From Heteronotia binoei (lineage: Eukaryota), in the NCBI RefSeq assembly GCF_032191835.1, contig NC_083235.1, forward strand, positions 45,880,001-45,944,000: 64,000 bases of DNA. The letters run 5' to 3'. Of this stretch, positions 9,851 to 42,380 are shown piece after piece. A program made the translations under genes and the position numbers. The notes under the pieces are model-generated. The model was not told the DNA's origin. It saw only the letters and a program-made list of their open reading frames with translations, and made no database searches. Every line of letters begins with the position of its first letter. Positions within the stretch are counted from its first letter, which is position 1.

Positions 9851-11862
9851 CTGTTGTATTATTATTCACAACGGGCCTTACTCCTAGTATAATATAAACT
9901 CTCCAAGGAACTGGAGCCACTGCCCTCAACACTTGCTCAATCCATCACAAAAATCATGAAACCTCCACAGATCCACCTGTCAGTGACCAGAACTTCTAAA
10001 TTAGCCCTTTTCTCCCCACATCTGTGTGTGATTCATCCACATCAATCTACTCTTCTCCAAATCTCAAGTTTGTGCCCACTGATTACTCTTTTTCTTGCAC
10101 TTTAGTTTCGCTTAAATACCTGACTTTCCACAAAGACACACGGCCCTGGTGATGAGGCTTGAGCATGGGGAGTAACAACTGGAGACATAGGTTCATAAGC
10201 CCCACTCTGCAATGGAAGTTGTTGGGTGACTTTGGGCCAGTTACTTTCTTAGCCTAACATATCCTGCACAGTTGTTGTAAGGATAAAAACAGATGAGGAG
10301 AATGATACCTATAACTTGCTTTGGGTCCCTATTTGGGAAGAACAAGGTACAGACACCTAGAAAATAAATATGATGCAACAAAATCTAATTAAGTCTTTGA
10401 GGTGGTTCCAGACTCCTGTTTTATCTTAGCTTCCAACTACACCCCTGCTCTTGCATGTAACTCCCCAAACCAAAACACCCAGCCTCCTCCCTCACTCAAA
10501 CAGTTAGATAATATTGGCAGAGCAATTAACACAGCAACAGTGCAAACCTGATTAAAGAGTGGAAAAAGGTTTATTTAGGAATTAACATTCTTGATAAGAA
10601 AAAGGTGAGAGAGAGATAGGTTCCTAACTACATCTCTAGCTGAGAGAGAGGGTAAGACTGAGTGTGGCACTTCCGAGAAGAAATCAGTGAAATAGCCCTA
10701 AAAGTAGCTATTTGGAGAGAGTCAAGGAATGACACTTAACAGGAGAGAAGGTGCCGACCTCATTATCCTATCTGTCTTTTTGCTGCTGCCTGCAGAATCT
10801 TCTTTGTACATCAGACATTGCCTTTCCCAACAGATAACAGACCTGGATACCCAGTTCCATCCCTAGGCCTGTACGTTTAGAGTTAGAGTATTTCTTTAAT
10901 CCTTTGTGTTTATCTTTGTTGTTTGAACCCATAGCAAGTCACACCACTGGTCTGCCTAGCTCAGTATTGCTTACTGCAACTGGCATTAACTTTCCAGGTT
11001 CTCAAGCAGAGTAAGGACTTTCCAAACTCTTGCTACTGGAAGTTACAGGGATTGACCTGGGACTTTCTATAGGCAAACTATGTGCTCTACCACTGAGCTG
11101 TGGTCCTTCCCATATTAAACAACATGTTTAATTACATACTCTGGTGGATTTTCCTCTTTGAGTGAAAAAGAAAACCTTGTTGCCTGTGTAAATTCATTTA
11201 AATATATTCAATCATCGAGCACTGAAGGTGAGTAAAAATAACGTTCCAACCAGCAAAACAAAAACCCAGCCCAGATGCTGCCCTAACACAGGCAACCATC
11301 CAGGAGTCCTTTGATCACACAAAAATAATTGCAGCTGGCAGCAGGAGTAACTGTGACAACTCCTTTCAGATTTGCTCCTGGGTTAGGTTCAAAGGAACCT
11401 GTTACCATGACGTCCTTGCTGTCAATGTAGAGTCTTTCCATATATACATATCCTTCTTTTTAGGATTTTAAAAAAACCTTAGACTTTTGCTCCCTTTGAC
11501 TCTGAATGGTTGATAGCAGGATATTAGTGTGTCTGTTGACTGGACCCATTTGACTTTTTCCAAGGGCAGCTCTGAGCTGACATACGTGAATTGATGATGC
11601 CAATTATAAATATTTGGTGCTTTTTGGGATAGCCCATGAACTCTAGTGCCTGCCTAATTCTACTTCCAGATGTTCAGCTGTTTTATGGTACTCATTGTTC
11701 TAGTCTGTAAGTTTGCTTCATCTTGAGGGGGATATGGACTGATTATGAGGGAGGAAGTGGGAGGAGGAAAATGGGGAGGGGAGGAGAGGGTCCAGTAAGC
11801 CACTAGAGGACAACAGCATCTTCCCCTCATTCAGATCAATGGGAGTCTTTTAGGAGCCAGAC

Positions 11863-11877
11863 ATGGGCATCAGAGAG
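11863..11877 (+). CDS. AQP14: Aquaporin-14 coding exon 1 (micro-exon, MGIRE)
   Basis: gacATGG strong Kozak; ATG GGC ATC AGA GAG then donor |gtaagg. Phase 0 joins the acceptor at 14587 to give MGIREELRSRQFW, matching my recollection of the teleost Aqp14 N-terminus MAIREELRSRQFW. Confidence 0.8.
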
Positions 11878-12214
11878 GTAAGGGCATCCTTTTGCAAATA
11901 TTGGAGATAGAATACTTGAATGGTGTTTTAATTCCACCGCCTTCCACCCTTCTGTCATTGTCATCCACTTCTTTGTTCTTATGACCAACCATTTAACCAT
12001 CTGTCTATGTACCTGTTTGTTGACAACCCGGTTTTCTACGTACCTTGAGATCAACCCCATCTATCCATTCTTTCTGCCTTTCAATCATTAAGCTGTGTTC
12101 TTTTTATTTTTCTCTTTGATTCTAAAGTGCTTACTTCTGAATTTCAGTTCAGCTGATCTACTTACGTTGAAAGATAGAAGGAATGATTAGTTCTGTATGC
12201 TGTGAAGTGGGATG

Positions 12215-12390
12215 TGGAATGGTATAGTATAGCCGAATCTTGTCAGATCTCAGAGTAAACAGGGTCAGTACTTGGGTGAGAGATACCAAGGAAGACTTTG
12301 CAGAGGAAGGCAAAGGCAATAGCACCTTTGCTTAATCACTTGTCATTAAAACCAATTGGGGTTGTCATAAGTTGGCTGTTACGCAGGAGG
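12215..12390 (+). mobile_element. 5S rRNA-headed SINE with Sauria-SINE-like tail (AQP14 intron 1)
   Basis: atcttgtcagatctcagagtaaacagggtcagtacttgggtgagagatacc plus aggcaaaggcaatagcacc...gttgtcataagttggc tail. Confidence 0.65.
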
Positions 12391-13734
12391 CGGAAAAAGA
12401 AATTATTTGGTACTTATTCTCACCAGCCACACTGATATCAATATGTTCAAAATCAGGACAGATGGATGCCATTTTAGGATGCTGCTGTACCTGATTTCTC
12501 CTTTACAGCTATAGACTGGGAGTTAAAAATGGGTTTAGAAAGCACCCCCTGCCCCTGGAGGGAGGGAACAAGGGAGAAAGAGCCTGCACAGCCAGCCAGG
12601 TGCCTCATTTTCCACATGGGGCATGTCCTTTATCTTCACCATTTGTAGGTTTACTAACCTCCAGATGGTGGCTAGAGATCTCCTGGGATTACAGTTGATC
12701 TTCAGGCAACAGAGATCAGTTCACCTAGAGAAAATGGCTGCTTTGGAAGGTGGATTCTATGATGGTGTACCCCAGTGAAGTCCTTCACCTCCCCAAATCC
12801 CATCCTCTTTAGGCTCCACCTCCTCAATCTCCAGATATTTCCAAACCTAGAGTTGGCAACAGTAACTGTGTGGGTATTATGAGACCAGTCCAAGTGCATC
12901 CTTTGCCATGCCAGGGCCAGTCCCTGCTTGAGGCCTTGCTTGCAACCTGCCGGGAGGGGGCAATCCTACAGGCCATTGACCCACCAGACTTTTCCCAGTT
13001 GCCATAATGGCACCTTGCCCTGCCCAATTTCTTCTACTGGTTAAGTCAATAAGAAGCTGAACATGTAGGTTTGTCAGGTCCTACTGTGCTCTTGGCTGGG
13101 GATTCTGGAGCTCTCCTAGAGTCTTCTGCTGCGTGTACGGTGACATTACCCGGAAGTGACATTGCGGTGCCGGCACTGTGTGCAATGCTCTAGGTTTGGG
13201 GCAAAATTCTGAGGGTTTTAGCTACAAAGCCATAGAGTTTGCCCAGAAAACAGCATCATTATGCAATGTCCCCAGCATGATGATGTCACTTCCGACTGAC
13301 ATCATCATGTCAGGATGTCGCACAGTGATGTCCCTGATGGAGGGTGGGATTTCCCCTGCCGGCCAGCTACAGAGCAGTAGATTGGAGCCCTGTAGACTGG
13401 AGGAATCTTCTGGCCAGACTGGGGAGCCAGGCAACTCTATGAACATGGCCATGTGCTCCTTGGGTTTAATCTTGTGCTCGGCAATAAGTTAATTGGGAGA
13501 TTTAAAGTAAGGCATTCCTTTGAAGCATCCTTATAAACCGTTTTTCTGCAGAGCATTCCTGAATAAATGGCGACAAACATAGCCAGGCTGGATTGTAATT
13601 AGAGCAAATAAAATAAATAACCTAGTTGTTTGAGCCTTGAGATGTAAGGTTTAGGAAATGGCTGTGCATATACATGCATTTTCTATTCCCACCTTGTTGG
13701 AATGGCTTGCCCAAGGAAGTCAGGAAGGCCTCCT

Positions 13735-13869
13735 CAGGGCTGGCCCTGGCACTAGGCAACTTCTTAGGGTGCCGGTTTTATGGCCGAACTGAGTGCCCCC
13801 CACGTGACTCAGTGACATTATCAGTGCTTGGGGGGGGGGGTGTGCCAGAAGTTAGCCTTGCCGGCCCTG
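13735..13869 (+). mobile_element. hAT-type MITE
   Basis: TIRs cagggctggccct/gccggccctg; 8-bp TSD ggcctcct/ggcttcct. Confidence 0.75.
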
Positions 13870-14218
13870 GGCTTCCTCATTTCTGGCATTCTGCAACCTA
13901 TATAAAACGAAACTATTCAGAAGTATATTTTGTAAATATAATGGTGGCGGAAGAAATTCATTTTTTCTTGGCTACCTTACAAGACTTGAAGGCTGGTTAT
14001 TCTGTTGTGGTTGCCTCAATCACAACAGGCCACTGAGAGCCATGTATTTCTTGAAGCCGCAGGCACTGTTTCTGTTATCTTAAGGAGTTAATCCCCCAAT
14101 GTATGTTTTTTAGATTTTAGAGTTTTCTGTAAACCTGGGTCTTTTCTAAGGTTTTAGTCTCCGGATTTAAGTTTCCACAGTTGGGGCCACACTGACGATA
14201 AAGGTTATCCAGTATCTT

Positions 14219-14464
14219 AGCCAGTTTGGTGTAGTGGTTAAGTGTGTGGACTCTTATCTGGGAGAACCGGGTTTGATTCCCCACTTCTCCACTTGCACCT
14301 GCTGAAATGGCCTTGGGTTGGCCATAGCTATCTCAGGAGTTGTCCTTGAAAGGGCAGCTGCTGTCAGAGCCCTCTCAGCCCCACCCACCTCACAGGGAGT
14401 CTGTTGTAGGGGGAAGCCGCTCCGATTCAGAGAGAAGGGTGGGGTATAAATCTGCAGTCTTCTT
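14219..14464 (+). mobile_element. tRNA-headed SINE with L2-like tail (Squam3-like)
   Basis: A-box tggtgtagtggtt, B-box-like ggtttgattcc, body ctctcagccccacccacctcacaggg, tail gggtataaatc...tcttctt; near-full match to the copy at 61573-61840. Confidence 0.85.
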
Positions 14465-14587
14465 ATATTTAATGAGGATAGGTTAGAATGCTAGGGTAGT
14501 ATTTCCTGATAATGTGTCTCTCTTATATGTCCATTTGTGTAAAGTATGCCTACATCCAGTGATTCTTCACTATTCTCTTCACTCCAG

Positions 14588-14944
14588 GAACTGCGGAGCC
14601 GTCAATTCTGGTGTTGCTTGTTGGCAGAAGCATCTGGCACCCTCATCTTTGTCTCAGTAGTGCTGGGTGCTTCCTCCCCTGCTGGTCCTAAACAAGTGCT
14701 CCCTCCTCCACTCCAGCCAGCTCTTGCTGCAGGGCTGGTTGCCATCAGCTTGGCACACTGCTTTGGCAAGGTCAGTGGCGCCCAGGTCAATCCAGCACTC
14801 ACTGTGGCTTTCCTGTGCACTCGCAAACTGGATGCTCTGCATGCTGCAAGCTATATCCTGGCCCAGTGCCTAGGTGCCATCCTAGCATCAAGTGCCTTCT
14901 TCCTCATGCTGCCTGCCTCAGCCATTGGGCAACTGGTTACCAAG
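14588..14944 (+). CDS. AQP14: Aquaporin-14 coding exon 2 (TM1-TM3, first NPA)
   Basis: Acceptor ttcttcactattctcttcactccag|GAA; 357 nt encoding ELRSRQFW...SGAQVNPALT...QLVTK; donor aag|gtgagt; phase 0. Confidence 0.92.
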
Positions 14945-16826
14945 GTGAGTGAGCTGCACCCTTTTTTCACTCCAGTTATCCTGGGAGATGCACCCTTTCC
15001 ACTCTAGCTAGCAGGGGCACAGAATGGCTTTACTGCTAGTGGCTGCGCCAGTCCCATCTCATGGTGCTGTACTGGGCCACTGAAGGTCTGAAACCATATA
15101 CGGACCACACAGGAATGGCAGTCTGAAGTTCAGTCACTGCATGATCACCTGATTTTGACAAAAGGAGGGAACTGTAAGAAAGCCAGTCGTATCAGCTAAG
15201 GAAATCATCTGATTCCAAAAGGCTAATGGTTTAGGGTAATGCTCCAAGACCTCTACAAATGCTTCCTGGTTATTCTTTCTTGCTGTTTTGGACAGCAAAC
15301 TCTATACCACCCTAGCTTTTCATGTGATTCAGTGATTTTACCTTTCCATGTCCTCAGCTGACCAGGAGCTGGGTCTATCACTCTGCTTCCCTTTTCCCAG
15401 CAATCCATGGGCATTATACTGACTTTCAGCTCCCTCCTGTTGGCTATTCCTAGTGCTCCCCTCTTTTTACAGGCTCACTGGGTCCACTGTTGCCCACAAA
15501 ACATTGTATGGGCTGAAAATGTCTTTTGGAACAAGGAAGCTTGTTTTAATTGCACAAAAATTTATTTTTATACCCTTATGAACATGAACTCAATGTATGT
15601 AAGATGCCTTTTCTTCTCAGTTTAACTTGTAAATGTAAGACAAGTGTACACAGTTATGAAGATAACAGTGCTTTAATAAATCCAGTAAGCTGATCTGAAA
15701 TTGTAGCCACCTTGAAATAATCTGAAACAACATCACACAAGTTATCCTTTTTGGTAGCATGACCTTTCAGATGCCAATCAGAATATCACAAAAGAAGGTA
15801 GCTAAGTTTTGCAACGCTTGTCTCTGTATTAGAAAGGCATATATCTCTTGATTTTATTGATACTTTTATTAATTTTTCTATCCTGTTTTAACCACTGATA
15901 ATTTTGCCATTCGATGTTTACATTTGTCTAATTATTAGGCTTTTTGTCAGCTTGGTGCCGTATAAATAAACTGACTGACTGACTTATAATATTGGTCTCT
16001 TCCATCTGCTCCAGTTTGTAGTATTGTTACCCTGAGACTGGAATTTATTTGTTCTAAAATAACCATTGATCGCACTTATTCCCTTTGAAAAAAAAGATTT
16101 CTCTTTAATTCTCTTTGTAGTTTTCTGGTACATCCTGGTTATCTGTGCACCCTTTTATACATTCATCAGCCTTTGCAGGATTTTTTGATGTTACATACCA
16201 CATGGTGGTGCTCTAGCAGGAGAATAGAAAAGTTTGCAGAAATATTGCCTGCCTCTGAGCATCTGCAGAGTGAAATTGTGCTAAATCTCCTTTCTTGCCA
16301 TTCCTCTCTCCAAATTTCTTCTTTTAAAAAAATCAAAACAGAATTGATTTGAAACAGACTCCAAATTCTTAAGGAGGAAAATAAATGGATTGTTGAATCT
16401 CAGGGAGAAACTTAATAAAGAAAAATTAAGATAATTTTTCTTAATATAACACCACTACTAATTTGTCACAATTTTTGTTAGTATTTGGGTTCCTTAAGAC
16501 AAAACAAAACATGAATCACTTTGCATCCTAGATGATAAACCCCATATCCTTTCAGTTACTCATAGTGAAGACAGACACATCAAAAACAAGTAGCCATAGT
16601 TTGTTTCTAATGATAATTTGAAACCAAAATACCATCAGAGAAGTATACTAACACCATTTGTTCAAAAGCCAATATATCAGAAATTATTTCATTGTGTTGT
16701 TCACATGTAAATGACCAGGAAAATACCCTTCAGTGACTTTGGATGCTCCTTGCTGAGTGGGAGACCACAGCCTCTCACACAAGCCCTCCTCGTCTCTCTA
16801 ACCTGTCTTTGGTGCCTTCATTTCAG

Positions 16827-16991
16827 GTGAGCAGTGAAGGGAATGCTGGACAAGCCCTGGGAATGGAGGCTTTCTCCACATTCCAGCTAGCTCTCACCAT
16901 CTTTGCTGTAGAAGACCATCGGCGGCGTGAATTGGGGGAGCCCAGCATCTTGGCTATTGGCTTCTCTGTAGTGGCAGGAGCCCTAGCTGCG
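16827..16991 (+). CDS. AQP14: Aquaporin-14 coding exon 3
   Basis: tttcag|...|gtaaga; 165 nt, same length as MIP exon 2; VSSEGNAGQALGMEAF...AVEDHRRRELGEP...AGALAA. Confidence 0.93.
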
Positions 16992-17185
16992 GTAAGAGCC
17001 CCTGCAGGTGAATGAGCTGCCCCTTTAAGGTGCTGGCTGGAAATACTAGATAAATTTATGGAAAGTCATGGGCCCAGCAGCAAAGCTGGTGTTTGTAGGC
17101 CAAAGACCCACCACACAATCTGGACATTACTTTTTCAGCTATGACAGATAAAAGAGTCCCTCTTGTTTCCATGTGGTAAAATAAA

Positions 17186-17518
17186 GAAGTAACACAGGAA
17201 GAAAATCTCTGCTGGAAGAGACCAGTGGTCCATCTAGTCCAGCTTCCTGTCTCACACCGTAGCCAACCAGTTCCTATGGATGACCAACAACAAGACACAG
17301 AGGCCGAGGCCTTTCCCAGATATTGCCTCCTAACACTGGGGTTCCAAGGTTGACTGCGTCTGAATGTGGAGGTTCTCCTTAGTCACCATGGCTAGTAGCC
17401 ACTGATAGGCCTATCCTCCATAAATCTATCTAATCCCTTTTTAAAGCTGCCTATGCCTGTAGCCAGCATTACATCCTCTGGCAGTGAATTCCACATTCGT
17501 TGTGTAAAGTATTTCCTT
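17186..17518 (-). mobile_element. CR1 LINE 3' fragment
   Basis: tagccactgataggcctatcctccataaatctatctaatcccttttta...ctctggcagtgaattccac is the reverse complement of a CR1 3' end. Confidence 0.8.
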
Positions 17519-17695
17519 ATGGCCCATTATGCACACACAGCTTACTGCAGATTTTCCAAGCAGTAAGCTTTTAAGCTTGACTTTGGATTCTGTTCCTGCC
17601 TTATGCACCATTCTTTTTCCTCTGGTGTATTCATTCTGCAGGTACAATTTCAACAAACCAATTTTTCTAAATTGGGGTGGAACATCACTTATGAC

Positions 17696-17909
17696 CAATG
17701 TTCCCTCTAAGCTGCAGTCTTGTGAGCCAAAATTCGATTTTGTGAGTTACTGGTATTAAAGTTGTGAACTACTGGCATTAAAGTTGTGAGCTATGCTACT
17801 GCATAAATTATTGTGCTCTAAGGGCATTTTTCCTGAGCTAAGACAAAAATGTGTGAGCTGGAGGCTAAAAATCTGTGAGCTAGCTCACACTAACTCTGAG
17901 GAAACATTG
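17696..17909 (+). mobile_element. hAT-type MITE
   Basis: TIRs caatgttccctc/gaggaaacattg; TSD cttatgac/ctcatgat (6/8). Confidence 0.65.
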
Positions 17910-19054
17910 CTCATGATATGTGGGAGGTAGTGTCCAAAGGTTTTTTTTTAAATTATGCATTGGCCTATCGCAGCTGCACAGCAGTATCCAGTAAGCACCT
18001 TCCATTTAAATCCTTGTGGTTCAGGTTTTGCACATGCATTTTAACATTAGTTCACTGAATGAAAGGGAACAGAAAGGAATGCAGGCACAAGGGGAAAAAA
18101 CCTGATGTTGAAATTGACCAGACTTTTCCTGCATCTGACAAGCAGCTGAGAAGCCCCATGTTCCATATTGCCAAGCACTAGGGCAGAAGTGCTGAACTAA
18201 TTTGTTAGGAGGGTCAGATCTGACAAAAATGGGACTTTTGGGGGCCAGGCCATGTGTGTCATAATATTTAATGTGAGGTAGCGGAGATATAAATTTTATA
18301 AAGGGCACAGACAAATACAAAGATATTTTAAAATTTAAAATATAAACATGCTTACAACTCTTGCAATAGTTTGTTTAAAATGGAAAAGTGGGGAAATAGT
18401 GAGATTTGGCAATGCAATCTTTAAAATAAAACATCAAGGAAAAGCACAAGGATCACAGCAGAAACTAAAAATATAAAATGCTCTGAGCCTGGGAAAACAA
18501 TGAAATTGCAAGCTTCTCTCCCCCCGCCCCAGGTCTACTCAGTTTGGTAATGGCTCTCCTGTATAATATTCCCCTTTGGCTGTAGGTTCCCAGGTTAGAG
18601 TACTCACTAGGTCAGGTCCATTGAGCAGAAACAAATTGGCTGAGAGCATCAACCCTTTGCTCCTGGAATCTGAGCTTCAGGAACACTGAAAGTGAAACAA
18701 TCTCCACTCCATTGAAAGACATTGCAGCACAGACAAAGCTGCAAGGAAAACACGAAATGGATCTTCTATCAAGGTCCCTGGGCTCTATCTATCTGGGCAG
18801 AGACTTTAATGGAAAATCCACTCCACGTTCTCCCTGCAGCTTTGATGGAAAGTCTGTTCCACATTTTCCTTGCAACTTTGTCTGTGCTGCAGTCTGCAAA
18901 GACAAAGCAGAAAAGGCAGGGAACTGAAAGAGCTGGGGACTTCATCAATCTCAGAGCTTCAAACCATGAGGACAGGAAGGGGGAGAAAAGAGCCCCGGGG
19001 CCCTGATTAAAGCTCTGGGCAGGCCAATTTTGGCCCACAGGATGGACATTTAAC

Positions 19055-19317
19055 TAGGGCCTTTTTTGAAGAAAAGGCCCAGCAGGAACTCATTTGCATA
19101 TTAGGCCACACCCCCTGGTATCACCATTGTTTCACACGGGGCTTTTTAAAGCCCAGCAGAGGCTCATTTGCATATTAGGCCACACACCCCTGACATCACC
19201 ATTGTTTCACACAGGGCTTTTTTTGGTAGAAGCCCAGCAGGAACCTATTTGCATATTAGGCCACACCCCCTGACACCAAGCCAGCTGGAACTGCATTCCT
19301 GCTCAAAAAAAGCCCTG
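19055..19317 (-). mobile_element. hAT-type MITE with three octamer-bearing internal units
   Basis: TIRs tagggcctttttt/aaaaaaagccctg; perfect 8-bp TSD catttaac on both sides; ATTTGCAT at 19092, 19166 and 19247. Confidence 0.9.
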
Positions 19318-20501
19318 CATTTAACACCCCTACACTGGGGGATTCACTGCTGTGTTATCGGCCACTGTGAAAAATGAGAGTCACACAATCTCATAATATG
19401 TGGGGACGTGAAGAGTGTACAGAATTCACAGTACAACCCACTGGCACTGCTACAGAAAGCTGTGATAGTTGGCAAGGTGTATGTGTGATTTTTAAATTCA
19501 GCGGTTTGCAGAAGGTCTATGTGATTGAGCTGCCATTTTAATGTTAGACTTCCAGAGACTGCCAAAATGACTCCTCTTCCCAACTTTGTTCACTGAAGCA
19601 CTGAAGGGGAAAATGTTTTCTTAGCCAGGAAACTTTTTTTTTAATTAAAAGTTTTAGTGGGAGAGAGTTAAGCAAGGCTATGAAGGTCATCTCAATCAAG
19701 TTAGTGCTGCGCAAGCAAATCCTAAATAAATGCTTCACTTTAGGTTGGAAAGCATGCTGATCCTAGGCACGCCTACTCAAAAATAAGTCCCATGGAATTC
19801 TGTGTGGTTTACTCCCAAGTAAGTATTCCTGGGATTTCAGCCTGCAAGTATTAGTTTGCAACTTTGCATTCTACCAATTTCTTAGCAACATTCACGGTGA
19901 GCCTCCCCCCAAAGGCAATCATTTAACGAGGAAGAAGAACCTGATCCTAGGACTGTCTACGCAAAAGTAAGTCCAACTGAGTTCAGTTGGGCTTACTCCT
20001 GAGTAAGTATCCCTGGGATTTCAGCCTGCAAGTATTCATTTACAACTCTCCTCTTTTAAAACTCCCCCCATTGTTTTAAGTTTTTTACAAGCAGCATGAG
20101 ACTAGCATTGGTTTCATATTGCTAGACTCATATAGCTTGTAAAAAAAATTAAAAATTAATACAGTGAGAGGAAATGGAGCTTGTACATCAATGATGAGGG
20201 GAAGATGGTGGATGCAGAGTAGGCAGACCGACCTCAGTGTTGGTGGTGGAGTAGGAGACGGGGAAAAGGCAACGGGGAAATCTGAGGGAATCTACATTTT
20301 AAATTACCTTTGGCCTGGAAATTAAGCAAGGGAAAATCCAGCGCAAAAAGTACTCAAAAAAAAAATCAGGAAAACAGCAATTGGAAAGTGAACTGAGCAC
20401 TGAAAGGAGGAAAAACAATGCAGAATGAAAAAGAAAACCCAACATATGTATATTGTGAAAGTGAAGCAGAACATCTGTGCGTAATAGGCCTTTGTCCATT
20501 C

Positions 20502-20960
20502 CAAGGGCATAGCCAGGAATTTTTTCTTCAGGGGGAATTTAAATAATTCAAAGGGGTACTCAGCCAAGGTAAGGCAAGCAAATGAGCCCCTCCCATAGCC
20601 ATGCTGTGGATCCCCATGGCTGCAAGGATGCAACACAAAACAAAAGTATACTTGCGCCTACTGGGTGGGTGCAGGGCTTGCTTGCACTGAGCAGTGGTGG
20701 CAATGGGCCAGCAAGAGAGGGCCACACAGGGCTTTGCAGCAGCGGCAATGAGAGGCTGGCGAGAGAAGGGGGCCATGGTGCAGGGCTTGCTGGTGGTGGG
20801 GCAGGCCAGAGAGGATGGTATGGGGCTTGCCAGCAGCAGCAATTAGTGGCTTGTGTGAAGCTTGCCAGCAACAATGACAAGTATAATAATTAAGTTGGAG
20901 GGCCTTGGTGATAAGTTGGGGGGCCAGGTCCTGAGAGGCCCCACTGTAGCTACAGGCCTG
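20502..20960. mobile_element. hAT-type MITE
   Basis: Ends caagggcatagcc/gctacaggcctg; TSD gtccattc/gtgcatcc (6/8). Confidence 0.55.
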
Positions 20961-20968
20961 GTGCATCC

Positions 20969-21540
20969 TGCATCTACTGCCCATCACCTTCATTGGATGC
21001 CCTGAAGTTCTAGTATTTTGGAAGGAGAAAATATTCTTTGTCAACTCTCTATCAACCCCACCCTGTAGTCATTTCTTTTCTAAACTGAAAAGTTCCAGTC
21101 TTCATCCTTTCCTCATAGGGAAGGCCCTCCAACCCCCAATAATCTTGGTCGCCCTGTTATGTACCTTTTCCAGCTCTGTGATGTCCTTTATGAGATACAG
21201 TGGCCTGAACTACACACAGCAGGGCTTTTTTTGTAGAAAAAGCTCAGCAGGAACTCATTTGCATATTAAGCCACACCCCTTGATACAAAGTCAGCTGGAA
21301 TTCCATTCCTGTACTTTCCCGCTCAAAAAAAGCCCTGGTATACAGTATTCAAAATGAGGCTGCACTATATATCCGTACAGGGGCGTTGTAATATGGGCTG
21401 TGCATTTTGAATTCCTTTCCTAATTCTTCCCAGGATACAGTTTGCCTTTTTCACTGCTGCAGCACACTGGCTTGACACTTCAATTGAGCTATCTATTATG
21501 AAGCCTAGATCTTTTTTCCTCTCAGTCTCTGCAGAGTACA
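20969..21540 (-). mobile_element. Old CR1 fragment interrupted by a MITE
   Basis: ctttcctcatagggaagg...gtaccttttccagctct...cagtattc...tttgcctttttcactgctgcagcacactgg is the reverse complement of the CR1 ORF2 C-terminal region. Confidence 0.75.
21220..21337 (-). mobile_element. hAT-type MITE (octamer family) nested in CR1
   Basis: TIRs cagggctttttt/aaaaaaagccctg; flanks acacacag/gtatacag look like decayed copies of an 8-bp target in the CR1; ATTTGCAT at 21257. Confidence 0.85.
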
Positions 21541-22595
21541 TGTGTAGCCTGGAGGAAGTTCTAGGTTCAGTTCCCAGCCTCACTGCTTAAAGAATCTCTG
21601 CTAGTAGGTGTTGGAAAAGCCTTCTTATTAGATTGGCTGATAGGTAGAGTAGACAGTATTTAAGTACATGGTCTGATTGGATAGGAGACAGCTTCATATG
21701 TTCAGAATGAGAAAACGATAAAGTCTGAAAGTTAATATGTAGCCAAATATTTTGATTTTGCATTCAGATCTTCTAGAACAGAAGGTTTAATCCCAACACA
21801 AATGGCTTCTGCAACCTTCTTTCCCAGCATATGAACATTCTGGCAGCTTTACAAGTCCATAGCTATAAGGGGAGCACACTGGAGTGATACCCCCAATTCC
21901 TGGTTTTCATTTTAAAAAGAGAGAGAGAGAGAAGCATTAAGCAGCTTCAGAGAAGGAAACCCTTTGCATCTCTGCCTGAGTCACTTGACTGGCCTTTCTT
22001 CTCTCCAGTCGGCAACACATGGAGGGTATAAAGTTTCAGTGTGCTTGTGGCTCACAGTTGCTATGTTTCAACATTACCGACTGTATCCCAGACTAGCCCA
22101 CAATACTTTGTTGACTTGGGGCAGAAGGGTGTTGTTTTATTTTTACTGCATTTTTGTTCATATTGAAAGCCACTTTGGTTTCCTTCAAGGAGATGAGGAG
22201 GATATCAATATTTAAATTAATATAATAAATACATACAGCAATCTTCTGAGCACACATGTATCAATGACACTGCCTTGAGAACATTGAGGGGATATTGAAT
22301 TATGTGCGCTAAACAGAGCAATATCTCTTACAGCAGCAGAAAATTATAAAACATTTAAGAGAAATGCTTCCTTGCAAAGCAGAGTTGAACATTAGTATGA
22401 TGTTTAGTACTGGTACACAAAGGACTGAGAAGGGATGCTGAAATCAAAATCCGCACACAGAATACATTTGTTAAAAATCTGATATTTAGAATAGTGTGTT
22501 CAAATTATATAATATGAAAGTTATGGTTACAGAATCACACATACCTGGTATTGAATGCTAAAGAAGTCCTGTAGGTGAAATACTTGCCATCATCA

Positions 22596-22765
22596 CCGGA
22601 GACATATGGTAGGGTTTTCAGAGGTAGTTTGCTATTGCCTTCCTCCGCATCATAATCTTGGTGTTCCTTGGTGGTTTCCAATCCAAATACTAGCCAGAGC
22701 CAACCCTGCTTAGCTTCTGAGATCTGACAAGATCAGCCTAGTGTGGGCTATCCAGAACAGGGTAG
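22596..22765 (-). mobile_element. 5S rRNA-headed SINE, antisense
   Basis: ccatccaaatactagccagagccaaccctgcttagcttctgagatctgacaagatc is the reverse complement of a 5S-like head. Confidence 0.7.
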
Positions 22766-22888
22766 GCTAAATACTAATAGTAAGAATACCAATTAGGATG
22801 AAGATGCTGGTTATAACTCATGAAATTATCCGTTGAAGAATGGAAATGGAATATCATTACTGACTATGCCAATATGATATCTCTCCAG

Positions 22889-22969
22889 GGCATATTCTCT
22901 GGGGGCAGCATGAATCCAGCCCGATCACTGGGACCAGCTGTAGTAACAGGAATCTGGGAACATCACTGG
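22889..22969 (+). CDS. AQP14: Aquaporin-14 coding exon 4 (second NPA)
   Basis: ctctccag|...|gtgagt; 81 nt, same length as MIP exon 3; [27 protein letters not shown]. Confidence 0.95.
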
Positions 22970-23479
22970 GTGAGTGGATGCTGGAAACCCAGCTGAGAGA
23001 TTAATGGCACTGTGTCCTTCTGAGCACGTATGTTTAGTTTGCCCTTCTTTCCCCAAAAATATTTATTTAGGGGCAAGGATCAAACCTGCCCGGAAGCTAC
23101 AGGCACTGTGAAAGTAGGTCAAACCAGCTGAGATGTTGTGTGTTCTATGAATGGAGCCTACAGGTGCAGCCTGGAAATATACCGAAATTACAACTGATCT
23201 CCAGACTTCAGAGATCAGCTCCTTTGGAGAAAATGGTTGTGTTGACGATGGATTCTTTGGCATTATATTCATCTGAGGACCCACCACCACTACCACCACT
23301 CTGCAGACATCACCCCCAAATATCCAGGAATTTCCCAGCCTAGAGTTGATAACTCTATTCTAGTGTCTTTAAAAAAAAATCACAACTGGGAGGGCCCATT
23401 CTCACTGAGGACCCAGTCACAAATAGCCCTATAGAGCTTCTATTTGGGGAAAACATACAGATACTTATTTGGATTATCA

Positions 23480-24110
23480 GATGTTTGTTTGTTTATGCTA
23501 TTTATAGTCTGCCTTTTTTACTTGGACTTAAGGTGGATTACACAGAGTGAATCAATACAATCAACAAAATGGGACATTCAGTAAACCAGTGCAATAGAAT
23601 TAGGGCTGTAGAACTAATCAGGAATCTAAAAACAGAACTGAAGCAAAACCTAAGTATTTAGATGACACATTATATGATACAAAATTACAGACTTACAACA
23701 AGCTATACATAGTATCACAGTCAATAATTTGTCCAAGTAAATGTGAATCATTTTGTACAGTGCAACTCTATTTTCTACACAGAAAAGCCCTCTTGAATAA
23801 TTCGGTTTTGCATAGTTTGTGGAAAGCTAGGAAAGCGGGGCACATTGGAGCAGGCACATGTATGGGCACTAGTTTGTTTTTGCTAATTTGCAGGTTAGCT
23901 CTTGCAGAAAGCCCTACTCAGATGAGCGAAACTGTTGTAGCAGAGCACAGATGAAGAGGTAGTCTCACAGATGTGAGGGTTCAAGGCCATGGAGAGCTTT
24001 CTGCATGACAGCCCTATTACTGATGGGCAGCCAGTGGAGTGAATGCAGAATAGGAACATTACGTGTGCTTCATCTAGCTCCCAATATTATTTGAGCCATG
24101 GTGTTGGAGC
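23480..24110 (-). mobile_element. Degenerate L2-like LINE 3' fragment
   Basis: A 3' tail reading gtttgtttatgctatttatagtctgcc and upstream ccatggagagctttc...ggcagccagtggagtga resemble antisense squamate L2. Confidence 0.5.
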
Positions 24111-24694
24111 TCTCTTCACAGAACTCCTAGCAGCTCTTCTGGTTTGGCCCTGGATTTCTTGATTTGTTGTCCCCTCTCTAAGAGCTCTCACTCTGTGGAT
24201 TGATTTCCATGAGATACAGAGTATGAGAAGGTGGAGATCCTAGACCCAAGCTGCGAATGTCACAGTCATATGTGATTTATATGTTCTTCTCTCTTCCTGT
24301 GTGTTCCTGCTCCAGGTTCACACTGTAGCGCACAGCAGAAGGAACTTTAGCTTTGCCCCCTAAGTTGTCACCTTTAAAAAAATGGTCAAAAGGGGGAGGG
24401 ACTATTTCAGCCTATTGCAGAAAACCATGTACCATTCTTCAGTGGACCTAACAATTCCTTCTCCGTTATCATTTGTTCATGGTAACAGTGCAGAGGCGAA
24501 GGCTGAAGTTCCTTCTACACACAAGCTGCACTCCAATTTAGAGCAAGAACATGGGTAGAGCATGCAAATAATGTATGACTGTGATAAAATAACATTTCAG
24601 TTCACAGGCTGTGTATACAGGGTTGCTAACTCTGGATTGGGAAATTCCTGGAGATTTGGGAGTGGAATTGCCAGGCTGTGGCAGCCAGTGGGGG

Positions 24695-25016
24695 ATAAGG
24701 ACATAAGAGAAGCCGTGTTGGATCAGGCCAGTGGCCCATCCACTCTGTGTCACACTGTGGCCAAAAAAAAACAGGTGCCATCAGGAGGTCCATCAGTGGG
24801 GCCAGAACACTAGAAACCCTCCCATTGTGCCCCCCCCACAAGCACCAAGAATACAGAGCATCACTGCGGTTAATATCACCAACAATACACTGTGGTTAAT
24901 AGCCACTGCTGGACTTCTGCTCCATATGTTTATCCAATCCCCTCTTGAAGCTGTCTGTGCTTGCAGCAGCCACCACCTCCTGTGGCAGTGAATTTCATGT
25001 GTTAATCACCCTTTGG
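24695..25016 (-). mobile_element. CR1 LINE 3' fragment
   Basis: acataagagaagccgtgttggatcaggcc...tttatccaatcccctcttgaag...ctcctgtggcagtgaatt; reverse complement of the CR1 3' end at 6660-8047. Confidence 0.88.
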
Positions 25017-25637
25017 GGATGGGGGTGGGCTTACCAGGAGCAGGGAGTTTAATTGCATGTTTCAGCAACATGCCCACAAGATTTCCAGTGTGACCTGGAA
25101 GTGACATAGGCATGTTGGGGTGATGCTCTGGTATTGGGGCCAGAGTTTTTGCCCAAAAACCAGAGCATTGCCCTGATGTTCTCAACATGCCTCCATCACT
25201 TCCAGGTCACATTGAAGTCACATAGGCACGTCACTGGAATGTTGGGTGTTTCTGTAGGTTTGGGAAGGGGTGATCTCCATTGGCTATAATGCCATAAAAT
25301 CCACTCTCTACAGCAACTATTTTCTACAGAGAAACTGAGGTCTGTAGTCAGTTGTAATTCCAGGAGATCTTCAGACCTCACCTGGAAGTTGGCAAGCCCC
25401 CACCCCAGGAATTCCATTTTGTGAAAATTGAACATGTGCCTTCAGATATATTGACTGGGCCTTGTTCTACATCCTGTTGCTTATCTTGTCCTGATATCAT
25501 ATTGATGCAGGTTCCCCTGAACTGAATCAATCCACGTCCTTCTCTCTGTGTCACACCTCTCCTGAGCCCTCCTGTACTGTATTGATTCAGAATCCATTTG
25601 ATTCAATCTCACTCACTTTCTCTTTTCCTCTGTTTAG

Positions 25638-25847
25638 GTGTACTGGCTTGGTCCCATCTTGGGTGCTGTCCTTGCTGGAATGTCTTACGAATTCTTCTTT
25701 GCTAGCACTGCTTCACGGGACAAGCTAATTGCCTGCCTGACCTGCCATGAGATTGAGATTGTGGAGGCAGCCAGCATGTCTCGTTCTTCACCCTCTGCTT
25801 CTGCTCACACCAAACCTCCTTGCAAGGGGGAACATAGTGCTGAATAG
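25638..25847 (+). CDS. AQP14: Aquaporin-14 coding exon 5 (TM6, C-terminus, stop)
   Basis: tcttttcctctgtttag|GTG; VYWLGPILGAVLAG...KLIACLTCHEIEIVEAASMSRSS...SAE*. Total CDS 828 nt, 275 aa. Confidence 0.93.
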   Translation: MYWLGPILGAVLAGMSYEFFFASTASRDKLIACLTCHEIEIVEAASMSRSSPSASAHTKPPCKGEHSAE

Positions 25848-33109: not shown

Positions 33110-33469
33110 ATGTGGGAGGCTCGCTCGTCCTCCTTTTGGAGGGCTATGTTTGCTGAGTTCTTTGGTACCATGTTCTATGTGTTCTTTGGCCTGGGGGCTT
33201 CACTTCGCTGGGTCGTCGGCCCCCTTAATGTTCTACATGTGGCACTGGCCTTTGGTTTGGCGGCCGCCACCATGGTGCAGTCTCTAGGCCACGTGAGCGG
33301 TGCCCACATCAATCCAGCAGTCACCATGGCCTTCTTGTTCGGTTCTCAGCTCTCCCTCTTCCGTGCTGTCTTCTACATGGTGGCCCAGGTGCTGGGAGGA
33401 ATGGCTGGGGCAGCTGTGCTTTATGGAGTCACACCACCAGCGCTGCGGGGTAACCTGGCACTCAACACG
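33110..33469 (+). CDS. MIP: Lens major intrinsic protein (AQP0) exon 1
   Basis: atcATGTGGGAG start; [12 protein letters not shown]...[10 protein letters not shown]...GNLALNT; 360 nt; donor acg|gtaact. Confidence 0.97.
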
Positions 33470-34044
33470 GTAACTGGACGCAGAGCTGTATGGGAGTGTG
33501 TTTGAGAAAGGGGACATTCTCTGTATCTGAACACTGAGGAAGTGATATTGCTATGTTCAGGAGGGCCTGTGTGATGCTTTTAAAATATGGATTATGAGAG
33601 AGGGTCTCATGGGTGCCAAAAGAGGGAGGGTGATATTTAGCTTTCTATGCCTAGATGGGTCTTTAATCCCAAGATCTAGAAGGGACATTTTTTTAGCTTA
33701 GGGTCTGGAAGCAGAACCTAAAAATGTTAATAGGTTTTTTGGTATTAGCATATCCCTTGTACTGGTTTATCACTGTGACTGGTTTCATAGCTGGGTGGGA
33801 GCCAGATAACAGGAAATGTTATATGTACATACGTCTGTGTATGCAAACTGGAAATGGGGAGAGAGACAGCATGATGGAGCAGAAAATTTTGTAATTTTAT
33901 AATGATGACGCTTTGAGAGTACAACAGGGTGATGAGAGAGAGAAAGAGCTTGCGGCCAAGTTGCTTGTTTGTTTAACACATCTATATCCTGCACTCTCAT
34001 GAATCAACAATTTCTTTTATAGTATTTTGTGTGAATTGCAGATG

Positions 34045-34235
34045 TAGAGCCATGTTAGCCTGTTGCAGTAAAAATAAGTAGGAATACTATACTGACTTAA
34101 GAATATCAAATTATCATTCTAGCATAAGACTCAGTGGACTAGAACCCACAGTCAGAGATGCATGCTGACAAAGTGGGCTCTGAGTCCATGAAAGCATATG
34201 CTAGACTAAAAAATGGTTATTTTTTTGAGGTGCTA
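34045..34235. mobile_element. Back-to-back inverted pair of Penelope-like pLTR remnants (MIP intron 1)
   Basis: agcataag..tggactagaacccac..tcaga is the inverted counterpart of ctgacaaagtgggctctgagtccatgaaagcatatgc; hammerhead core decayed (ctgacaa). Confidence 0.65.
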
Positions 34236-35050
34236 CAAGAATCTTTCATGAAGGGACTGTGGTAACTGTTAATGAGATTCACTGATATTGAACAGTGTAA
34301 ATCTACTCTGATTACATAAATCAATCTTCTTGATGTTTGGAAGAAAGATGTCTTCTGTCCAAGCGCTGGGATCAGACCTCAGGTGTAAGCTTTGGTCTGT
34401 TAGGAGCATTTTCGCCCATTAGGCTATAATGTGATGTTGAAGCTCCTTCCTGCTGTGAATGAGAATGTTGCTAATGTCACACAGATGATAGAAGGGGAAT
34501 CTTCAACAGAAGCTTTGTATTGATATTAGATATTAATTTACAAAAACTCCAGATTTACCCGTGTGAGTACATTTTAATATTTGCTCAGGAGAAAAAAATA
34601 TGTTTGAATCTTTGTGTATGTTATAGAGGGAAACACACTGCCTGTTGGAAAAAATAAAATGTTCTGTCAGTGCTCACTGATGGGAATTAACATTGCTTAG
34701 AAGCCTATCAGAATTCCTGTGCAGTTCTCTTCCAGAGGCATTGGTGTTATCTGGGTTTAAACTTCCTCCACAGACTATGTGCATCTTTATGGCCCATTCT
34801 ATGGGCAACTTTATGTAATGTGGCTATTTTGTGCATTATAGTGCTTCATATCTTCAGTTTAGGAAGTGATCAATTTAGGTATGTTGCACTGAAGTCAAGG
34901 GTAACTGATCCATAGATATAAAGAACTGGCACCTAAGTCTTTTGAATCAAACTTTATATGCATGGTCAGGCTGCAGGTTTCAAATTGGGATGAAAATCCA
35001 CTGAGTGCAGAGAATAGCAACAAAGATAGCTAACAGTTAAGGGGTACAAG

Positions 35051-35147
35051 TAGGGCCTTTTTTTTTAGCAGGCTGGCTTGGCACCAGGGGGTGTGGCCTA
35101 ATATGCAAATGAGTTCCTGCTGGGCTTTTTCTACAAAGGAAGCCCTG
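35051..35147 (+). mobile_element. hAT-type MITE (octamer family)
   Basis: TIRs tagggccttttt/aagccctg; TSD ggtacaag/ggtacaga; ATGCAAAT at 35103. Confidence 0.8.
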
Positions 35148-37913
35148 GGTACAGAATTTTAAAAGGGCCATGGACAGAGTAGGGGTGCAATGAAATGTAA
35201 GATTAGAACTGCAGTCACTGCATTCACCCCTCCTCCCCTTGTAGGCTGAATCCAGCATCCTCCTGCTACATAAAAGACAGAGTAATTTCCCACAGTTCCA
35301 GTAATGATTCAGTTGCTAATTTTATCTCCACTCCTGTCCACTTTTAAAAAATGTTTTTAAAGTGTTACACCAATTGCTTTTCAGCCCCGCCCCCAGCAAA
35401 AAGCACACTCCATAGTAATAAAATCTGAAGAACTGGTTTGGAGTAGGGATGCTCAAACTTCCACCAGTTCAGCTTATGTCCCTATCCACAAGTTGCAAAC
35501 AAGGGACCTTTTCCCCCCCGCTTTTTAAAAAAAACGAAATCTGGAACTTCAGAGGCAATAGATCATTAGAATGTTAATAGCACAACAGCAATTACTGATT
35601 TCAAAAAACCTTCAAAAAGCCTTTGAGTAGCATGGCATGTGAAAAATGCAGGGAAAGTGGTGGCTTGCTGTGTGGATTCAGCCACAGATAGTTGTTATAA
35701 ACAAATGTTATGTTTTAAAAAACCCAGTGTTCATCTAAGCAGATTTTAGTCAATGGCCACCAATCTGTTGGAATTGGCAGCATTATGGTGTTCAGTTTTG
35801 GAAAAACTGATGCAACCCTGTTTGACAGGAGTCTGCAGAAGTTTGACATGAACCAACCAGACAGAGTGATTGGTTCATAAATGACTGAAACCTTCAAACA
35901 TGGTAAGTTTGAGTTTTGAACATATGTGATGTGAAATGTGGCATCCCTGGTCTGGGGATGGAGGGAGATGTTTCCTGAGGACATCCTAGGTACCATCCTG
36001 TCAGCATTGTGCACAGTCAGCTTCTACTGCAAACATACAGTAACAGTTTTCACTAAAGAGATCGTAGTTTATCTGACAAAAAGCACAGTGAGTGTTCTTC
36101 CAAAATGTCTCCTCCATCAAATAACATTTCATTTGTGTGCACTTTAAAGCAAGGAAGAAAATCATGAGGGTGAGGTGGGCCCAAAGTTGTGTCTGAGGTG
36201 TGGATGGGTGAACAGCAGTGACCTATCAGAATGTGAAGTCTAGTCTTTGTGAAAAGGAAAGGCAGGAAGTAGAAGACCATGTGGGTGGATGTAAACTGGG
36301 GTTGTTTCCAGGGAAAGGTAAGAGGTGCAGCGTTGAAAGGAAAAAATGACAAAGAGCATTTTGTTTCATATTTCTTCTCCTCCCCCCAAACGGTAGCAGT
36401 TCTTTGGGGGATTTCTGTGCGACATCTGTTTTCAGTTATCCACCTTCCAGGTTTTCCCCAGCTTTGCTACCTGTTTTTTCAAACATGTTTTAGTATGATC
36501 TTTCCAGAAAGATTGTGTCAAAAGTCATTCCAGGAAATTCATACCTTACTTGTTGGTTTTTTTGGCAGGAAGATACGACATTCATCCTCTCCCACATCTA
36601 GTGACACAGCAAGCCTCATTTTCCGTAGTACCTGCCATCACTCCACCAGCAGCAGGTTTTTATTGGCTATTTTTTAAACCAGCAGATGCATCACTATTGC
36701 ATCATTATATTATAGCTATATAGCTACCACCCTTTTTTTAAAAAAATGAGCAGAACGGCAGGTATGAATTTATATACTATGGGAAATACCTCCATTACTC
36801 TGGTGCTATTGTAAATACCTCTGCATTCACAACAACGAGAGAAGAACAGTGAGTCATTGTGTAGATGCAACTAATTACTTGAAAATAATCCACAGAATAT
36901 AGTGGGAAGTGTAAGGAAGTATAGCATTGCCAAGGTTCAGCTAGACAGGCTAGAGAGTACACACTTTGGTCATCTGGAGATTATTATTCCAGATACTTTC
37001 TTCTGTAATGTCTCAGCTTGTGATCTTTCTTTGGGTGGATGGTTGAATTAGATGGCCTTTTGGTTCCTACTAGCCTGATTATTCTTTTAAAATGCATAAA
37101 GCCAAGGGAAGCCCTTAAAAATAGAAGGGCACATCAATACCAATGCCCACCCCCCCAATTAACTAGTGATATACACTATTGCATGATTTTTAACAGGTGG
37201 GGCTCTGAAGCAGAGAGACAGTGGCATGTATTCTACCGTAGATTGGAGGAGACTTAAATGACTCTTCTGTTGGAGCAAAATCCACTCAAGTCTTTTGAGG
37301 AAGCCTCCTTAGGTGGGAGGAAAGCTTGAAACTGCTTAGTGAACAGTAGGATATAGACTGCTGTCAGCATCAAGTATAGCAGGCTTCAGCTGGGGATTCA
37401 ACTGCCACCAAATTCTGGTCAAAGGAAGGAACTACCAAGCCTGTTAACAGCAAGAGGAGTGGGCCATTAAAGTGATACTCCTTGTCTCAACATAGGCTTC
37501 CAAGATCAGAGGTCTGAGCATCTCTTTTGATGCTGGCTACAGTTTCTGGCTTCCTTCTTGTCTTTCTAGCTGTTTCCCTTTTACTTTGCTTCATCTTTGC
37601 CTCATCCTAGCCAGCCTCTGACTTGACTGAAACTGGGTCTGGCAAATAGTGACATTTTCATAGTGACCTATGAAAATGCCTTTCCTGTAAATCTTCAATT
37701 TGTTAACAGCACCATAAACATTTGCTGGACATGGAATGGGTACAATTAAAATAAAATTCAGCCTGGGAAAATAAACAAGATGGGCCTCTGGGCACAACTT
37801 CAGTAATTATGCAATTATGGTTTGATTGGTCATATCAGTAAGGGACAAAATCTAGTGTTGGCTTCTATTGTTCTCTTATACCTCTCTCTTTCTGTGTGTC
37901 TCCCTGGCTGCAG

Positions 37914-38078
37914 ATACACCCCAGTGTAAATGTCGGCCAAGCTACCGTTGTGGAGATCTTCCTGACCCTGCAGTTTGTTCTCTGCGTCTTTGCCACCTAT
38001 GATGAGAGACGCAATGGGCGCATGGGATCTGTGGCAATGGCTGTGGGATTCTCCCTCACTCTTGGACACCTCTTTGGG
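37914..38078 (+). CDS. MIP: MIP exon 2
   Basis: ctgcag|ATA...GGG|gtaatg; 165 nt; [36 protein letters not shown]...GHLFG. Confidence 0.97.
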
Positions 38079-40808: not shown

Positions 40809-40889
40809 ATATATTACACAGGAGCTGGCATGAATCCTGCCCGATCTTTCGCCCCTGCTGTTATCACCCGCAATTTCACCAACCACTGG
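40809..40889 (+). CDS. MIP: MIP exon 3
   Basis: ttgcag|...|gtaagc; 81 nt; [27 protein letters not shown]. Confidence 0.97.
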
Positions 40890-41151
40890 GTAAGCAAGTG
40901 GGTGCTTTTTTGGGGGTGGGTGGGTAAGGTAATAAGCTGAAATGATAAGATGTGTAATAGTTGTAAAGATGACTCAGACATGATTTATTCTGACTCAGTT
41001 TCCACCAAGGCCCTATTTCTTACATGCCATCGAAGTCTCTTTTCGAACAAGAAAACTAGATACCAAAGTCTACTACTGTGGTCCCATTCCTCAGGACAAC
41101 TGATCTTTAGTACAAAGTTGGGATGGGAAACTTAGGTTATTTGGTCTAGAA

Positions 41152-42094: not shown

Positions 42095-42380
42095 GACTAC
42101 CATCTTTGGAACTTCCTCCCTCAGGGAGGTTTGTCTGACTCCATCTATTGTTGATTTCCACTGAGGATGAAAGCTTTTCGTTTTGTTTGGCATTCCCTCA
42201 CTACCTCTTATTAGACCCCCGTCTAGTTTTTATGCTTTTAAGTGGTTATGTGTTTTATTTGTTTTTAAAAATTTGTACATATTTGTATTTTAAATGCTGT
42301 TTTTGATATTTGAAATGTTTTTATGTCTAACACTATGGGGTCCCTGTGTCTGATCAAAATGTTTAAATAAATACAAAAAA
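42095..42380 (+). mobile_element. Degenerate L2-like 3' end
   Basis: GC-moderate body followed by a long T-rich stretch and an aaataaatacaaaaaaaaataaa tail. Confidence 0.4.

What the first reader, a model, noticed from the sequence alone, without database searches (positions are those of the whole stretch)
11863..25847. Intact AQP14 gene whose real start is a hidden 15-nt micro-exon 2.7 kb upstream
Seen: ATG GGC ATC AGA GAG|gtaagg at 11863-11877, in strong Kozak context, splices in phase 0 to a strong acceptor at 14587. This gives MGIREELRSRQFW..., followed by GT-AG exons of 357, 165, 81 and 210 nt (275 aa, both NPA boxes, no lesions). Known: AQP14 is a little-studied aquaporin subfamily linked to AQP0, kept in non-therian vertebrates and decayed in therian mammals. 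From memory, teleost Aqp14 begins MAIREELRSRQFW. Inference: automated models are likely to use the intronic ATG at 14546, or label the gene AQP4-like/MIP-like, and get the N-terminus wrong.
Basis: partly seen in the sequence, partly recalled or inferred. Interest (0 to 1): 0.75.

Follow-up and report, generated by a model that had tools for sequence, protein, structure and literature searches.

The report
Gecko AQP14 gene, already annotated correctly
This is an intact aquaporin-14 water-channel gene of the gecko Heteronotia binoei whose first five codons lie on a tiny exon 2.7 kb upstream, but that layout was published for the family in 2019 and the public annotation of this genome already holds the same 275-residue protein, so the finding is correct but ordinary.

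Summary
ATG GGC ATC AGA GAG|gtaagg lies at 11863-11877 and joins in phase 0 to an acceptor at 14586-14587. GT-AG exons of 357, 165, 81 and 210 nt follow, giving 275 codons with two NPA boxes and no lesion.

The gene is AQP14. It is 73% identical to a curated turtle AQP14 and 61% to salmon Aqp14, against about 45% to AQP4. It sits directly upstream of MIP/AQP0 on the same strand. It has the five-exon layout, a non-aromatic pore filter (V30/A53/A176/G185/R191) and the conserved T241 and S257.

The first exon is conserved: MGIRQ in Crotalus, MGVLE in Lerista, MGIRE in Tiliqua and Liasis, and M-x-[ILW]-[RKQ]-E in most of the 136 fetched vertebrate relatives.

It is not hidden and not new. Chauvigné et al. 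2019 state that sarcopterygian aqp14 genes have five exons, with exon 1 coding 3-7 residues. Models for three other geckos do start at an intronic ATG.

The 11877^14588 RNA junction could not be tested, because the runs laid show no expression.

The parts
11863..11877 (+). Coding part of AQP14 exon 1: ATG GGC ATC AGA GAG (MGIRE), donor gtaagg at 11878
   Evidence: identical to residues 1-5 of NCBI protein P0032. Only match to the family pattern in the window, with 0 expected. Homologous exon in Crotalus L001:6001-6015 and Lerista L002:10001-10015.
11763..11862 (+). Conserved flank upstream of the start codon (motifs CCACTAGAGGACAACAGCA and TCAGATCA); 5' UTR or core promoter, not told apart
   Evidence: blastn and MAFFT against Crotalus and Lerista. 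The rest of intron 1 does not align between these species.
11878..14587 (+). Intron 1, 2710 nt, GT-AG, carrying SINE-like repeats at about 12711-12761 and 14219-14464
   Evidence: Intron 1 is 2538 nt in Crotalus and 1392 nt in Lerista. Repeat reads appear.
14546..14587 (+). In-frame intronic ATG and 14 codons (MPTSSDSSLFSSLQ) running into exon 2: the rival start
   Evidence: The same kind of start is used by models of Gekko kuhli, Euleptes and Eublepharis. The ATG aligns with one in Lerista and is missing in snakes.
14588..14944 (+). Exon 2, 357 nt, residues 6-124: TM1-TM3 and first NPA
   Evidence: Pfam MIP 2.2e-20; identical to P0032 residues 6-124.
16827..16991 (+). Exon 3, 165 nt, residues 125-179
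   Evidence: Pfam MIP 3.6e-07.
22889..22969 (+). Exon 4, 81 nt, residues 180-206: second NPA and Arg191
   Evidence: Pfam MIP 1.5e-08.
25638..25847 (+). Exon 5, 207 nt plus TAG, residues 207-275: TM6 and the C-terminal tail with T241 and S257
   Evidence: aligned with salmon Aqp14.
33116..44315 (+). Neighbouring MIP/AQP0 gene (four coding blocks found at 33116, 37929, 40815 and 44253); the synteny mark of AQP14
   Evidence: tblastn. Exon 1 matches lens MIP/AQP0 at 8.4e-53. A 273-aa MIP-family gene is annotated from window 33110.

Best explanation
Window 11863-25847 (+) is the intact AQP14 gene of the gecko Heteronotia binoei. It has five coding exons. The first carries only the start codon and four more codons (MGIRE) and is spliced across a 2.7-kb intron to the 357-nt exon that begins ELRSRQFW. 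The product is a six-helix MIP-fold channel with two NPA boxes and a wide, non-aromatic constriction (V30, A53, A176, G185, R191). By analogy with tested fish Aqp14, it should pass water and small solutes such as urea, glycerol, ammonia and H2O2, and should be moved to and from the membrane through phosphorylation of T241 (PKC) and S257 (PKA). Shown here: the gene structure, its integrity, its orthology signals, and the conservation of the first exon. Inferred: the splicing of exon 1 to exon 2 in this animal, the transport range and the regulation. The gene, its structure and this exact protein are already in the literature and in the public annotation.
For: Sequence and splice sites. Public model identical exon by exon with the same span. 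Window identical to H. binoei CM063337.1. Published family structure (five exons in sarcopterygians, exon 1 coding 3-7 residues, position upstream of aqp0, squamate sequences MN168312-15). Exon-1-removed alignments in the paper start at the residue that begins exon 2 here, and zebrafish MAIKE|ELRSRQFW and platypus MATRE|GLRS are printed there. First exon conserved in Crotalus and Lerista with a conserved upstream flank and a similar intron. N-terminal survey of 136 relatives. Identity is 73% to a curated turtle AQP14 and 61% to salmon Aqp14 from residue 1, against about 45% to rat AQP4, hand-counted. AQP0 lies downstream on the same strand. Filter and phosphosite residues.
Against: No RNA read was obtained across 11877^14588. 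Three raw RNA-seq runs (X13-X15, one sample) gave zero depth on every exon laid. On what evidence NCBI built its model cannot be seen with these tools. An in-frame ATG 42 nt upstream of exon 2 is used by models for three other geckos. No tree with all aquaporin subfamilies was built.
Confidence: 0.9

Rival explanations
1. The protein starts, mainly or in part, at the contiguous in-frame ATG at 14546. Transcripts would begin inside intron 1 and give a 284-residue isoform starting MPTSSDSSLFSSLQ-ELRS.
For: The ATG is in frame, has a purine at -3 and a stop two codons upstream. Models for Gekko kuhli (MPTSYDPSLFPPLQ), Euleptes (..MFKISDLSLFPPLQ) and Eublepharis (MAIDPSLFPPLQ) start this way. The ATG aligns with an in-frame ATG in the skink Lerista.
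Against: The stretch is the polypyrimidine tract and likely branch site of a conserved strong acceptor. Such tracts lack stop codons by composition. The ATG region is absent in Crotalus and Naja. The encoded residues are not conserved outside geckos, whereas most of the 136 relatives, from sharks to frogs, begin M-x-[ILW]-[RKQ]-E directly before ELRS. NCBI's model for this genome uses the upstream exon.
Confidence: 0.07
2. The gene is an AQP4 paralogue or an AQP0 duplicate, as the database names 'aquaporin-4-like' and 'lens fiber major intrinsic protein' suggest, and not AQP14.
For: AQP4 is the nearest solved structure (4.9e-55). NCBI names for relatives are AQP4-like, AQP2-like, MIP or AQPAe.a-like.
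Against: Identity is only about 45% to AQP4, against 61-73% to curated or tested AQP14. The Phe and His of the AQP4 filter are replaced by Ala. The gene has five coding exons with a tiny first one, lies next to AQP0, and the true AQP0 sits 7 kb downstream. The paper itself places AQP14 in the AQP4-related grade, which explains the names.
Confidence: 0.02

Closest known systems
Vertebrate AQP14 subfamily (Chauvigné et al. 2019, Commun Biol 2:462, PMC6906440; first named in Finn et al. 2014, PMC4245216)
   Same: Five coding exons with exon 1 giving 3-7 residues, position upstream of AQP0, non-aromatic five-residue constriction with Val30 on TMD1, conserved T241 and S257, and 61-73% identity to curated members.
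   Different: Nothing of substance. This species was not among those listed in the paper; its squamate entries are python, tiger snake, western green lizard and green anole.
NCBI model 'aquaporin-4-like [Heteronotia binoei]' (P0032, assembly GCA_032191835.1, CM063337.1)
   Different: Only the name, which is generic and does not say AQP14.
AQP4 (for example rat 2ZZ9, human 3GD8)
   Same: MIP fold, two NPA boxes, nearest solved relative, same grade of classical aquaporins.
   Different: About 45% identity. The AQP4 filter F77/H201/A210/R216 is A53/A176/G185/R191 here. The locus and exon structure also differ.

Membership tests
AQP14 | MIP-family channel with two NPA boxes and an intact reading frame | tested here: met
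   Pfam PF00230 on exons 2, 3 and 4. NPA at residues 73-75 and 188-190. No stops or frame breaks across the five exons.
AQP14 | Closer to recognised AQP14 proteins than to any other subfamily | tested here: met
   73% to the author-deposited Chrysemys AQP14 and 61% to functionally tested salmon Aqp14, both aligned from residue 1. Shark Aqp14 entries rank among the hits of the Varanus AQP14 query. Identity to AQP4 is about 45%, and AQP2, AQP1, AQP0 and AQP5 score lower. This rests on similarity only.
AQP14 | Groups inside the AQP14 clade in a tree with AQP0-16 | not tested
   Sequences of the other subfamilies were not fetched as usable ids, so no tree was built.
AQP14 | Lies upstream of the animal's AQP0 gene | tested here: met
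   AQP0/MIP exons at 33116-44315 on the same strand. The same order is seen in Lerista, with an SPRY-domain gene further upstream.
AQP14 | Five exons in sarcopterygians, exon 1 coding 3-7 N-terminal residues | tested here: met
   Coding lengths are 15, 357, 165, 81 and 210 nt, and exon 1 is conserved in Crotalus and Lerista. The RNA junction itself was not seen.
AQP14 | Non-aromatic constriction residues with the loop-E Arg kept, and a fifth residue (Val30) on TMD1 | tested here: met
   Alignment to rat AQP4 gives A53/A176/G185/R191. V30 is present. The rule comes from the paper.
AQP14 | Conserved C-terminal PKC Thr240/241 and PKA Ser256/257 | tested here: met
   T241 sits in ACLTC and S257 in SRSS, aligned with salmon. 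The sites are defined in the paper.
AQP14 | Permeable to water, urea, glycerol, ammonia and H2O2, with neuropeptide-regulated trafficking | not testable with these tools
   Needs oocyte swelling and uptake assays.
AQP4 (the name in the public annotation) | Aromatic/His selectivity filter (F77, H201) and orthologue-level identity to AQP4 | tested here: not met
   Ala stands at both filter positions and identity is about 45%.

The most novel reading that the evidence does not exclude
Geckos, and perhaps skinks, may use two starts for AQP14: the conserved upstream exon (MGIRE) and an intron-1 promoter with the in-frame ATG 36-42 nt before exon 2. This would give two N-terminal isoforms, loosely like the M1/M23 isoforms of AQP4. 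The in-frame ATG is present in Heteronotia, Gekko, Euleptes, Eublepharis and Lerista and absent in snakes.
Probability: 0.06. Interest if true: 0.35.

Novelty: already known. Interest (0 to 1): 0.08.

Why it matters
It matters little beyond housekeeping. The gene should be named AQP14 and not "aquaporin-4-like". The AQP14 models of several other squamates look wrong at the N-terminus or skip exons, and could be corrected from this pattern: Eublepharis, Euleptes, Gekko kuhli, Podarcis raffonei, Rhineura, Anolis carolinensis, the Naja and Varanus models (named 'Aquaporin 14' in UniRef), Crotalus and Lerista. No open question becomes testable through this finding.

Tried and rejected
**RNA test of the 11877^14588 junction.**
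- The look-up of sequencing runs on exon 2 gave one weak RNA holder (X1, share 0.24) and three raw RNA runs of one sample.
- Laid on 11300-17100, the raw runs had zero depth on exons 1-3. They covered only repeat copies at about 12711-12761 and 14219-14464, at 95-99% likeness.
- X1 gave one 175-nt contig on 14785-14949, with 10 further letters that do not fit the intron. This would fit splicing 14944^16827, because exon 3 also begins GTGAG, but the loose letters were not shown. The contig says nothing about exon 1.

**Comparative loci.**
- Naja naja contig L003: the 8.2 kb upstream of exon 2 is not collinear with Crotalus, and no first exon was found. It is uninformative.
- Mauremys and Microcaecilia loci could not be fetched.
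- The SPRY-domain neighbour seen in Lerista has no match in the window.

- The joined spliced protein was never built or searched. Exons were searched one by one by reference, and full-length comparisons used the database protein P0032.
- The 154-aa open stretch 14543-15004 was used as the first query so that candidates up to 269 aa could appear.
- The large representative search was not used, because the protein was not left open.
Full report
**Observation.**
ATG GGC ATC AGA GAG lies at 11863-11877 in the context gccagacATGG and is followed by gtaagg.
- The acceptor ...ctcttcactccag lies at 14586-14587, and exon 2 starts GAA CTG CGG AGC CGT CAA TTC TGG at 14588.
- The other exons are 16827-16991, 22889-22969 and 25638-25847. 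All borders are GT-AG and all phases are 0.
- The coding lengths are 15, 357, 165, 81 and 210 nt, which makes 275 codons plus TAG. NPA boxes are at residues 73-75 and 188-190.
- Exons 2, 3 and 4 each hit Pfam MIP on their own.
- A loose pattern for the family's first exon plus donor matches once in the 64-kb window, at 11863. None of 100 shuffles gave a match.
- The in-frame intronic ATG at 14546 is also real.

**How the searches were run.** Exons were searched by reference one at a time. Full-length comparisons used a database protein (P0032), which I then checked against the window exon by exon.

**What the gene is.**
- The first word search used the open stretch around exon 2. It returned reptile, amphibian and fish proteins that UniRef names "Aquaporin 14" and NCBI names "aquaporin-4-like", "lens fiber major intrinsic protein" or "hypothetical protein".
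- A second search with the Varanus protein gave 532 hits. One of them is P0032, "aquaporin-4-like [Heteronotia binoei]", 275 aa.
- P0032 is identical to the window's five exons, residues 1-5, 6-124, 125-179, 180-206 and 207-275.
- Its gene on CM063337.1 of GCA_032191835.1 spans 13,985 bp, exactly the length of 11863-25847. The fetched locus is letter-for-letter the window from 1863 to 35847.
I confirmed it in this way.

**Subfamily.**
- P0032 is 73% identical, from residue 1, to the author-deposited painted-turtle AQP14. It is 61% identical to Atlantic salmon Aqp14, one of the channels tested in oocytes.
- Against solved structures the best match is AQP4 (4.9e-55), then AQP2, AQP1, AQP0 and AQP5. 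I counted about 45% identity to rat AQP4 from that alignment.
- The same alignment puts Ala53, Ala176, Gly185 and Arg191 at the AQP4 filter positions F77, H201, A210 and R216. Val30 is present.
- This fits the paper's description of five non-aromatic constriction residues with the Arg kept and a fifth residue, Val30, on TMD1. It also agrees with another first-stage note on this stretch.
- T241 and S257, the PKC and PKA sites of fish Aqp14, are kept at the same numbers.
- A second aquaporin gene lies downstream on the same strand, with coding blocks at 33116, 37929, 40815 and 44253. Its first exon matches lens MIP/AQP0 at 8.4e-53. This is the synteny that the paper gives for all aqp14 genes.
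- I did not build a tree with all subfamilies.

**The first exon.**
- Chauvigné et al. 2019 state that aqp14 genes have five exons in all sarcopterygians that keep them. [quoted passage not shown]
- Their supplement prints zebrafish ATG GCA ATA AAA GAG | GAG CTG CGG AGC CGT CAG TTT TGG and platypus ATG GCT ACC CGG GAG | GGC CTA CGA. Their exon-1-removed alignment starts at the residue that begins exon 2 here.
- They deposited AQP14 of python, tiger snake, western green lizard and green anole.
- In the rattlesnake locus L001 the homologous exon ATGGGCATCAGACAG|gtaaga lies 2538 nt before exon 2. In the skink locus L002 ATGGGCGTCCTGGAG|gtaaga lies 1392 nt before it.
- The 100 nt upstream also align: CCACTAGAGGACAACAGCA and TCAGATCA.
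- Between the gecko and these two species, the only collinear blocks across the locus are the four large exons, the first exon or its upstream flank (the exon itself against Crotalus, the flank against Lerista), one block about 450-700 nt further upstream, and blocks after the stop codon (the main one at 26285-26791). Intron 1 itself does not align.
- NCBI models of Tiliqua and Liasis start MGIRE and Sceloporus starts MGIKE.
- Of the 136 relatives fetched, most, from sharks to frogs, start M-x-[ILW]-[RKQ]-E immediately before ELRS..FW.

**The rival start.**
- Models for Gekko kuhli, Euleptes and Eublepharis begin at an in-frame ATG 36-69 nt (12-23 codons) before exon 2, like 14546 here. Each has an in-frame Met 36-42 nt before the exon. 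An aligned in-frame ATG exists in Lerista, but the segment is missing in Crotalus and Naja.
- This stretch is the pyrimidine tract and probable branch site (GTGAT) of the conserved acceptor. It would stay open by composition alone.
- I rate it a small possibility as an alternative start and not as the main one.

**RNA.**
Three raw RNA-seq runs of one sample showed zero depth on exons 1-3 and only repeat-derived reads.
- One short metatranscriptome contig ends five letters past exon 2, with ten letters that do not fit the intron. That is compatible with the exon 2-3 splice but is not proof.
- The junction 11877^14588 therefore rests on conservation, on the published family structure and on NCBI's model. 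I could not see on what evidence that model was built.
- Fifteen nucleotides is only the coding part of exon 1. Its 5' end is unknown. A four-codon upstream ORF (ATG GGA GTC TTT TAG, 11839-11853) would lie in the leader if transcription starts further upstream.

**Verdict.**
- The claim that this is hidden from automated annotation is wrong for this genome. It is right only for the name and for some other squamates.
Marsupials and the platypus keep the gene.
- This is already known, and interest is low.

Noticed in passing
window 26285-26791 (also 26096-26143): About 500 nt starting some 440 nt after the AQP14 stop codon are conserved with the skink (76%, E 8e-93) and the rattlesnake (72%, E 1e-51), as strongly as the coding exons. 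It could be a 3' UTR or a regulatory element between AQP14 and MIP.
   Followed up: no
window 11149-11420: Two collinear non-coding blocks 450-700 nt upstream of the start codon are conserved in both Crotalus and Lerista (E down to 2e-17). They may be a promoter, an enhancer or an untranslated upstream exon.
   Followed up: no
window 11839-11853: A four-codon upstream ORF, ATG GGA GVTC-like GTC TTT TAG (MGVF*), lies in frame with the main ATG and ends 10 nt before it. It is not present in Crotalus or Lerista.
   Followed up: partly
window about 12711-12761 and 14219-14464: Repeat (SINE-like) segments in intron 1 draw thousands of RNA reads and contigs at 95-99% likeness with loose ends on both sides. 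These are transcripts of other copies, not of this locus.
   Followed up: no
P0009, P0019, P0008, P0005, P0030, P0033, P0034: Several public AQP14 models in other reptiles look faulty. A Platysternon fragment is named 'alcohol dehydrogenase'. The Lerista model joins exon 1 to the middle of exon 2 and skips exon 4. The Crotalus model skips exon 4. The Naja naja model named 'Aquaporin 14' in UniRef (P0005) and three gecko models have intron-derived N-termini.
   Followed up: partly
L003 (Naja naja SOZL01000834.1) 1-8226: Upstream of AQP14 exon 2 this contig is not collinear with the rattlesnake locus. This may be an insertion or a misassembly.
   Followed up: no
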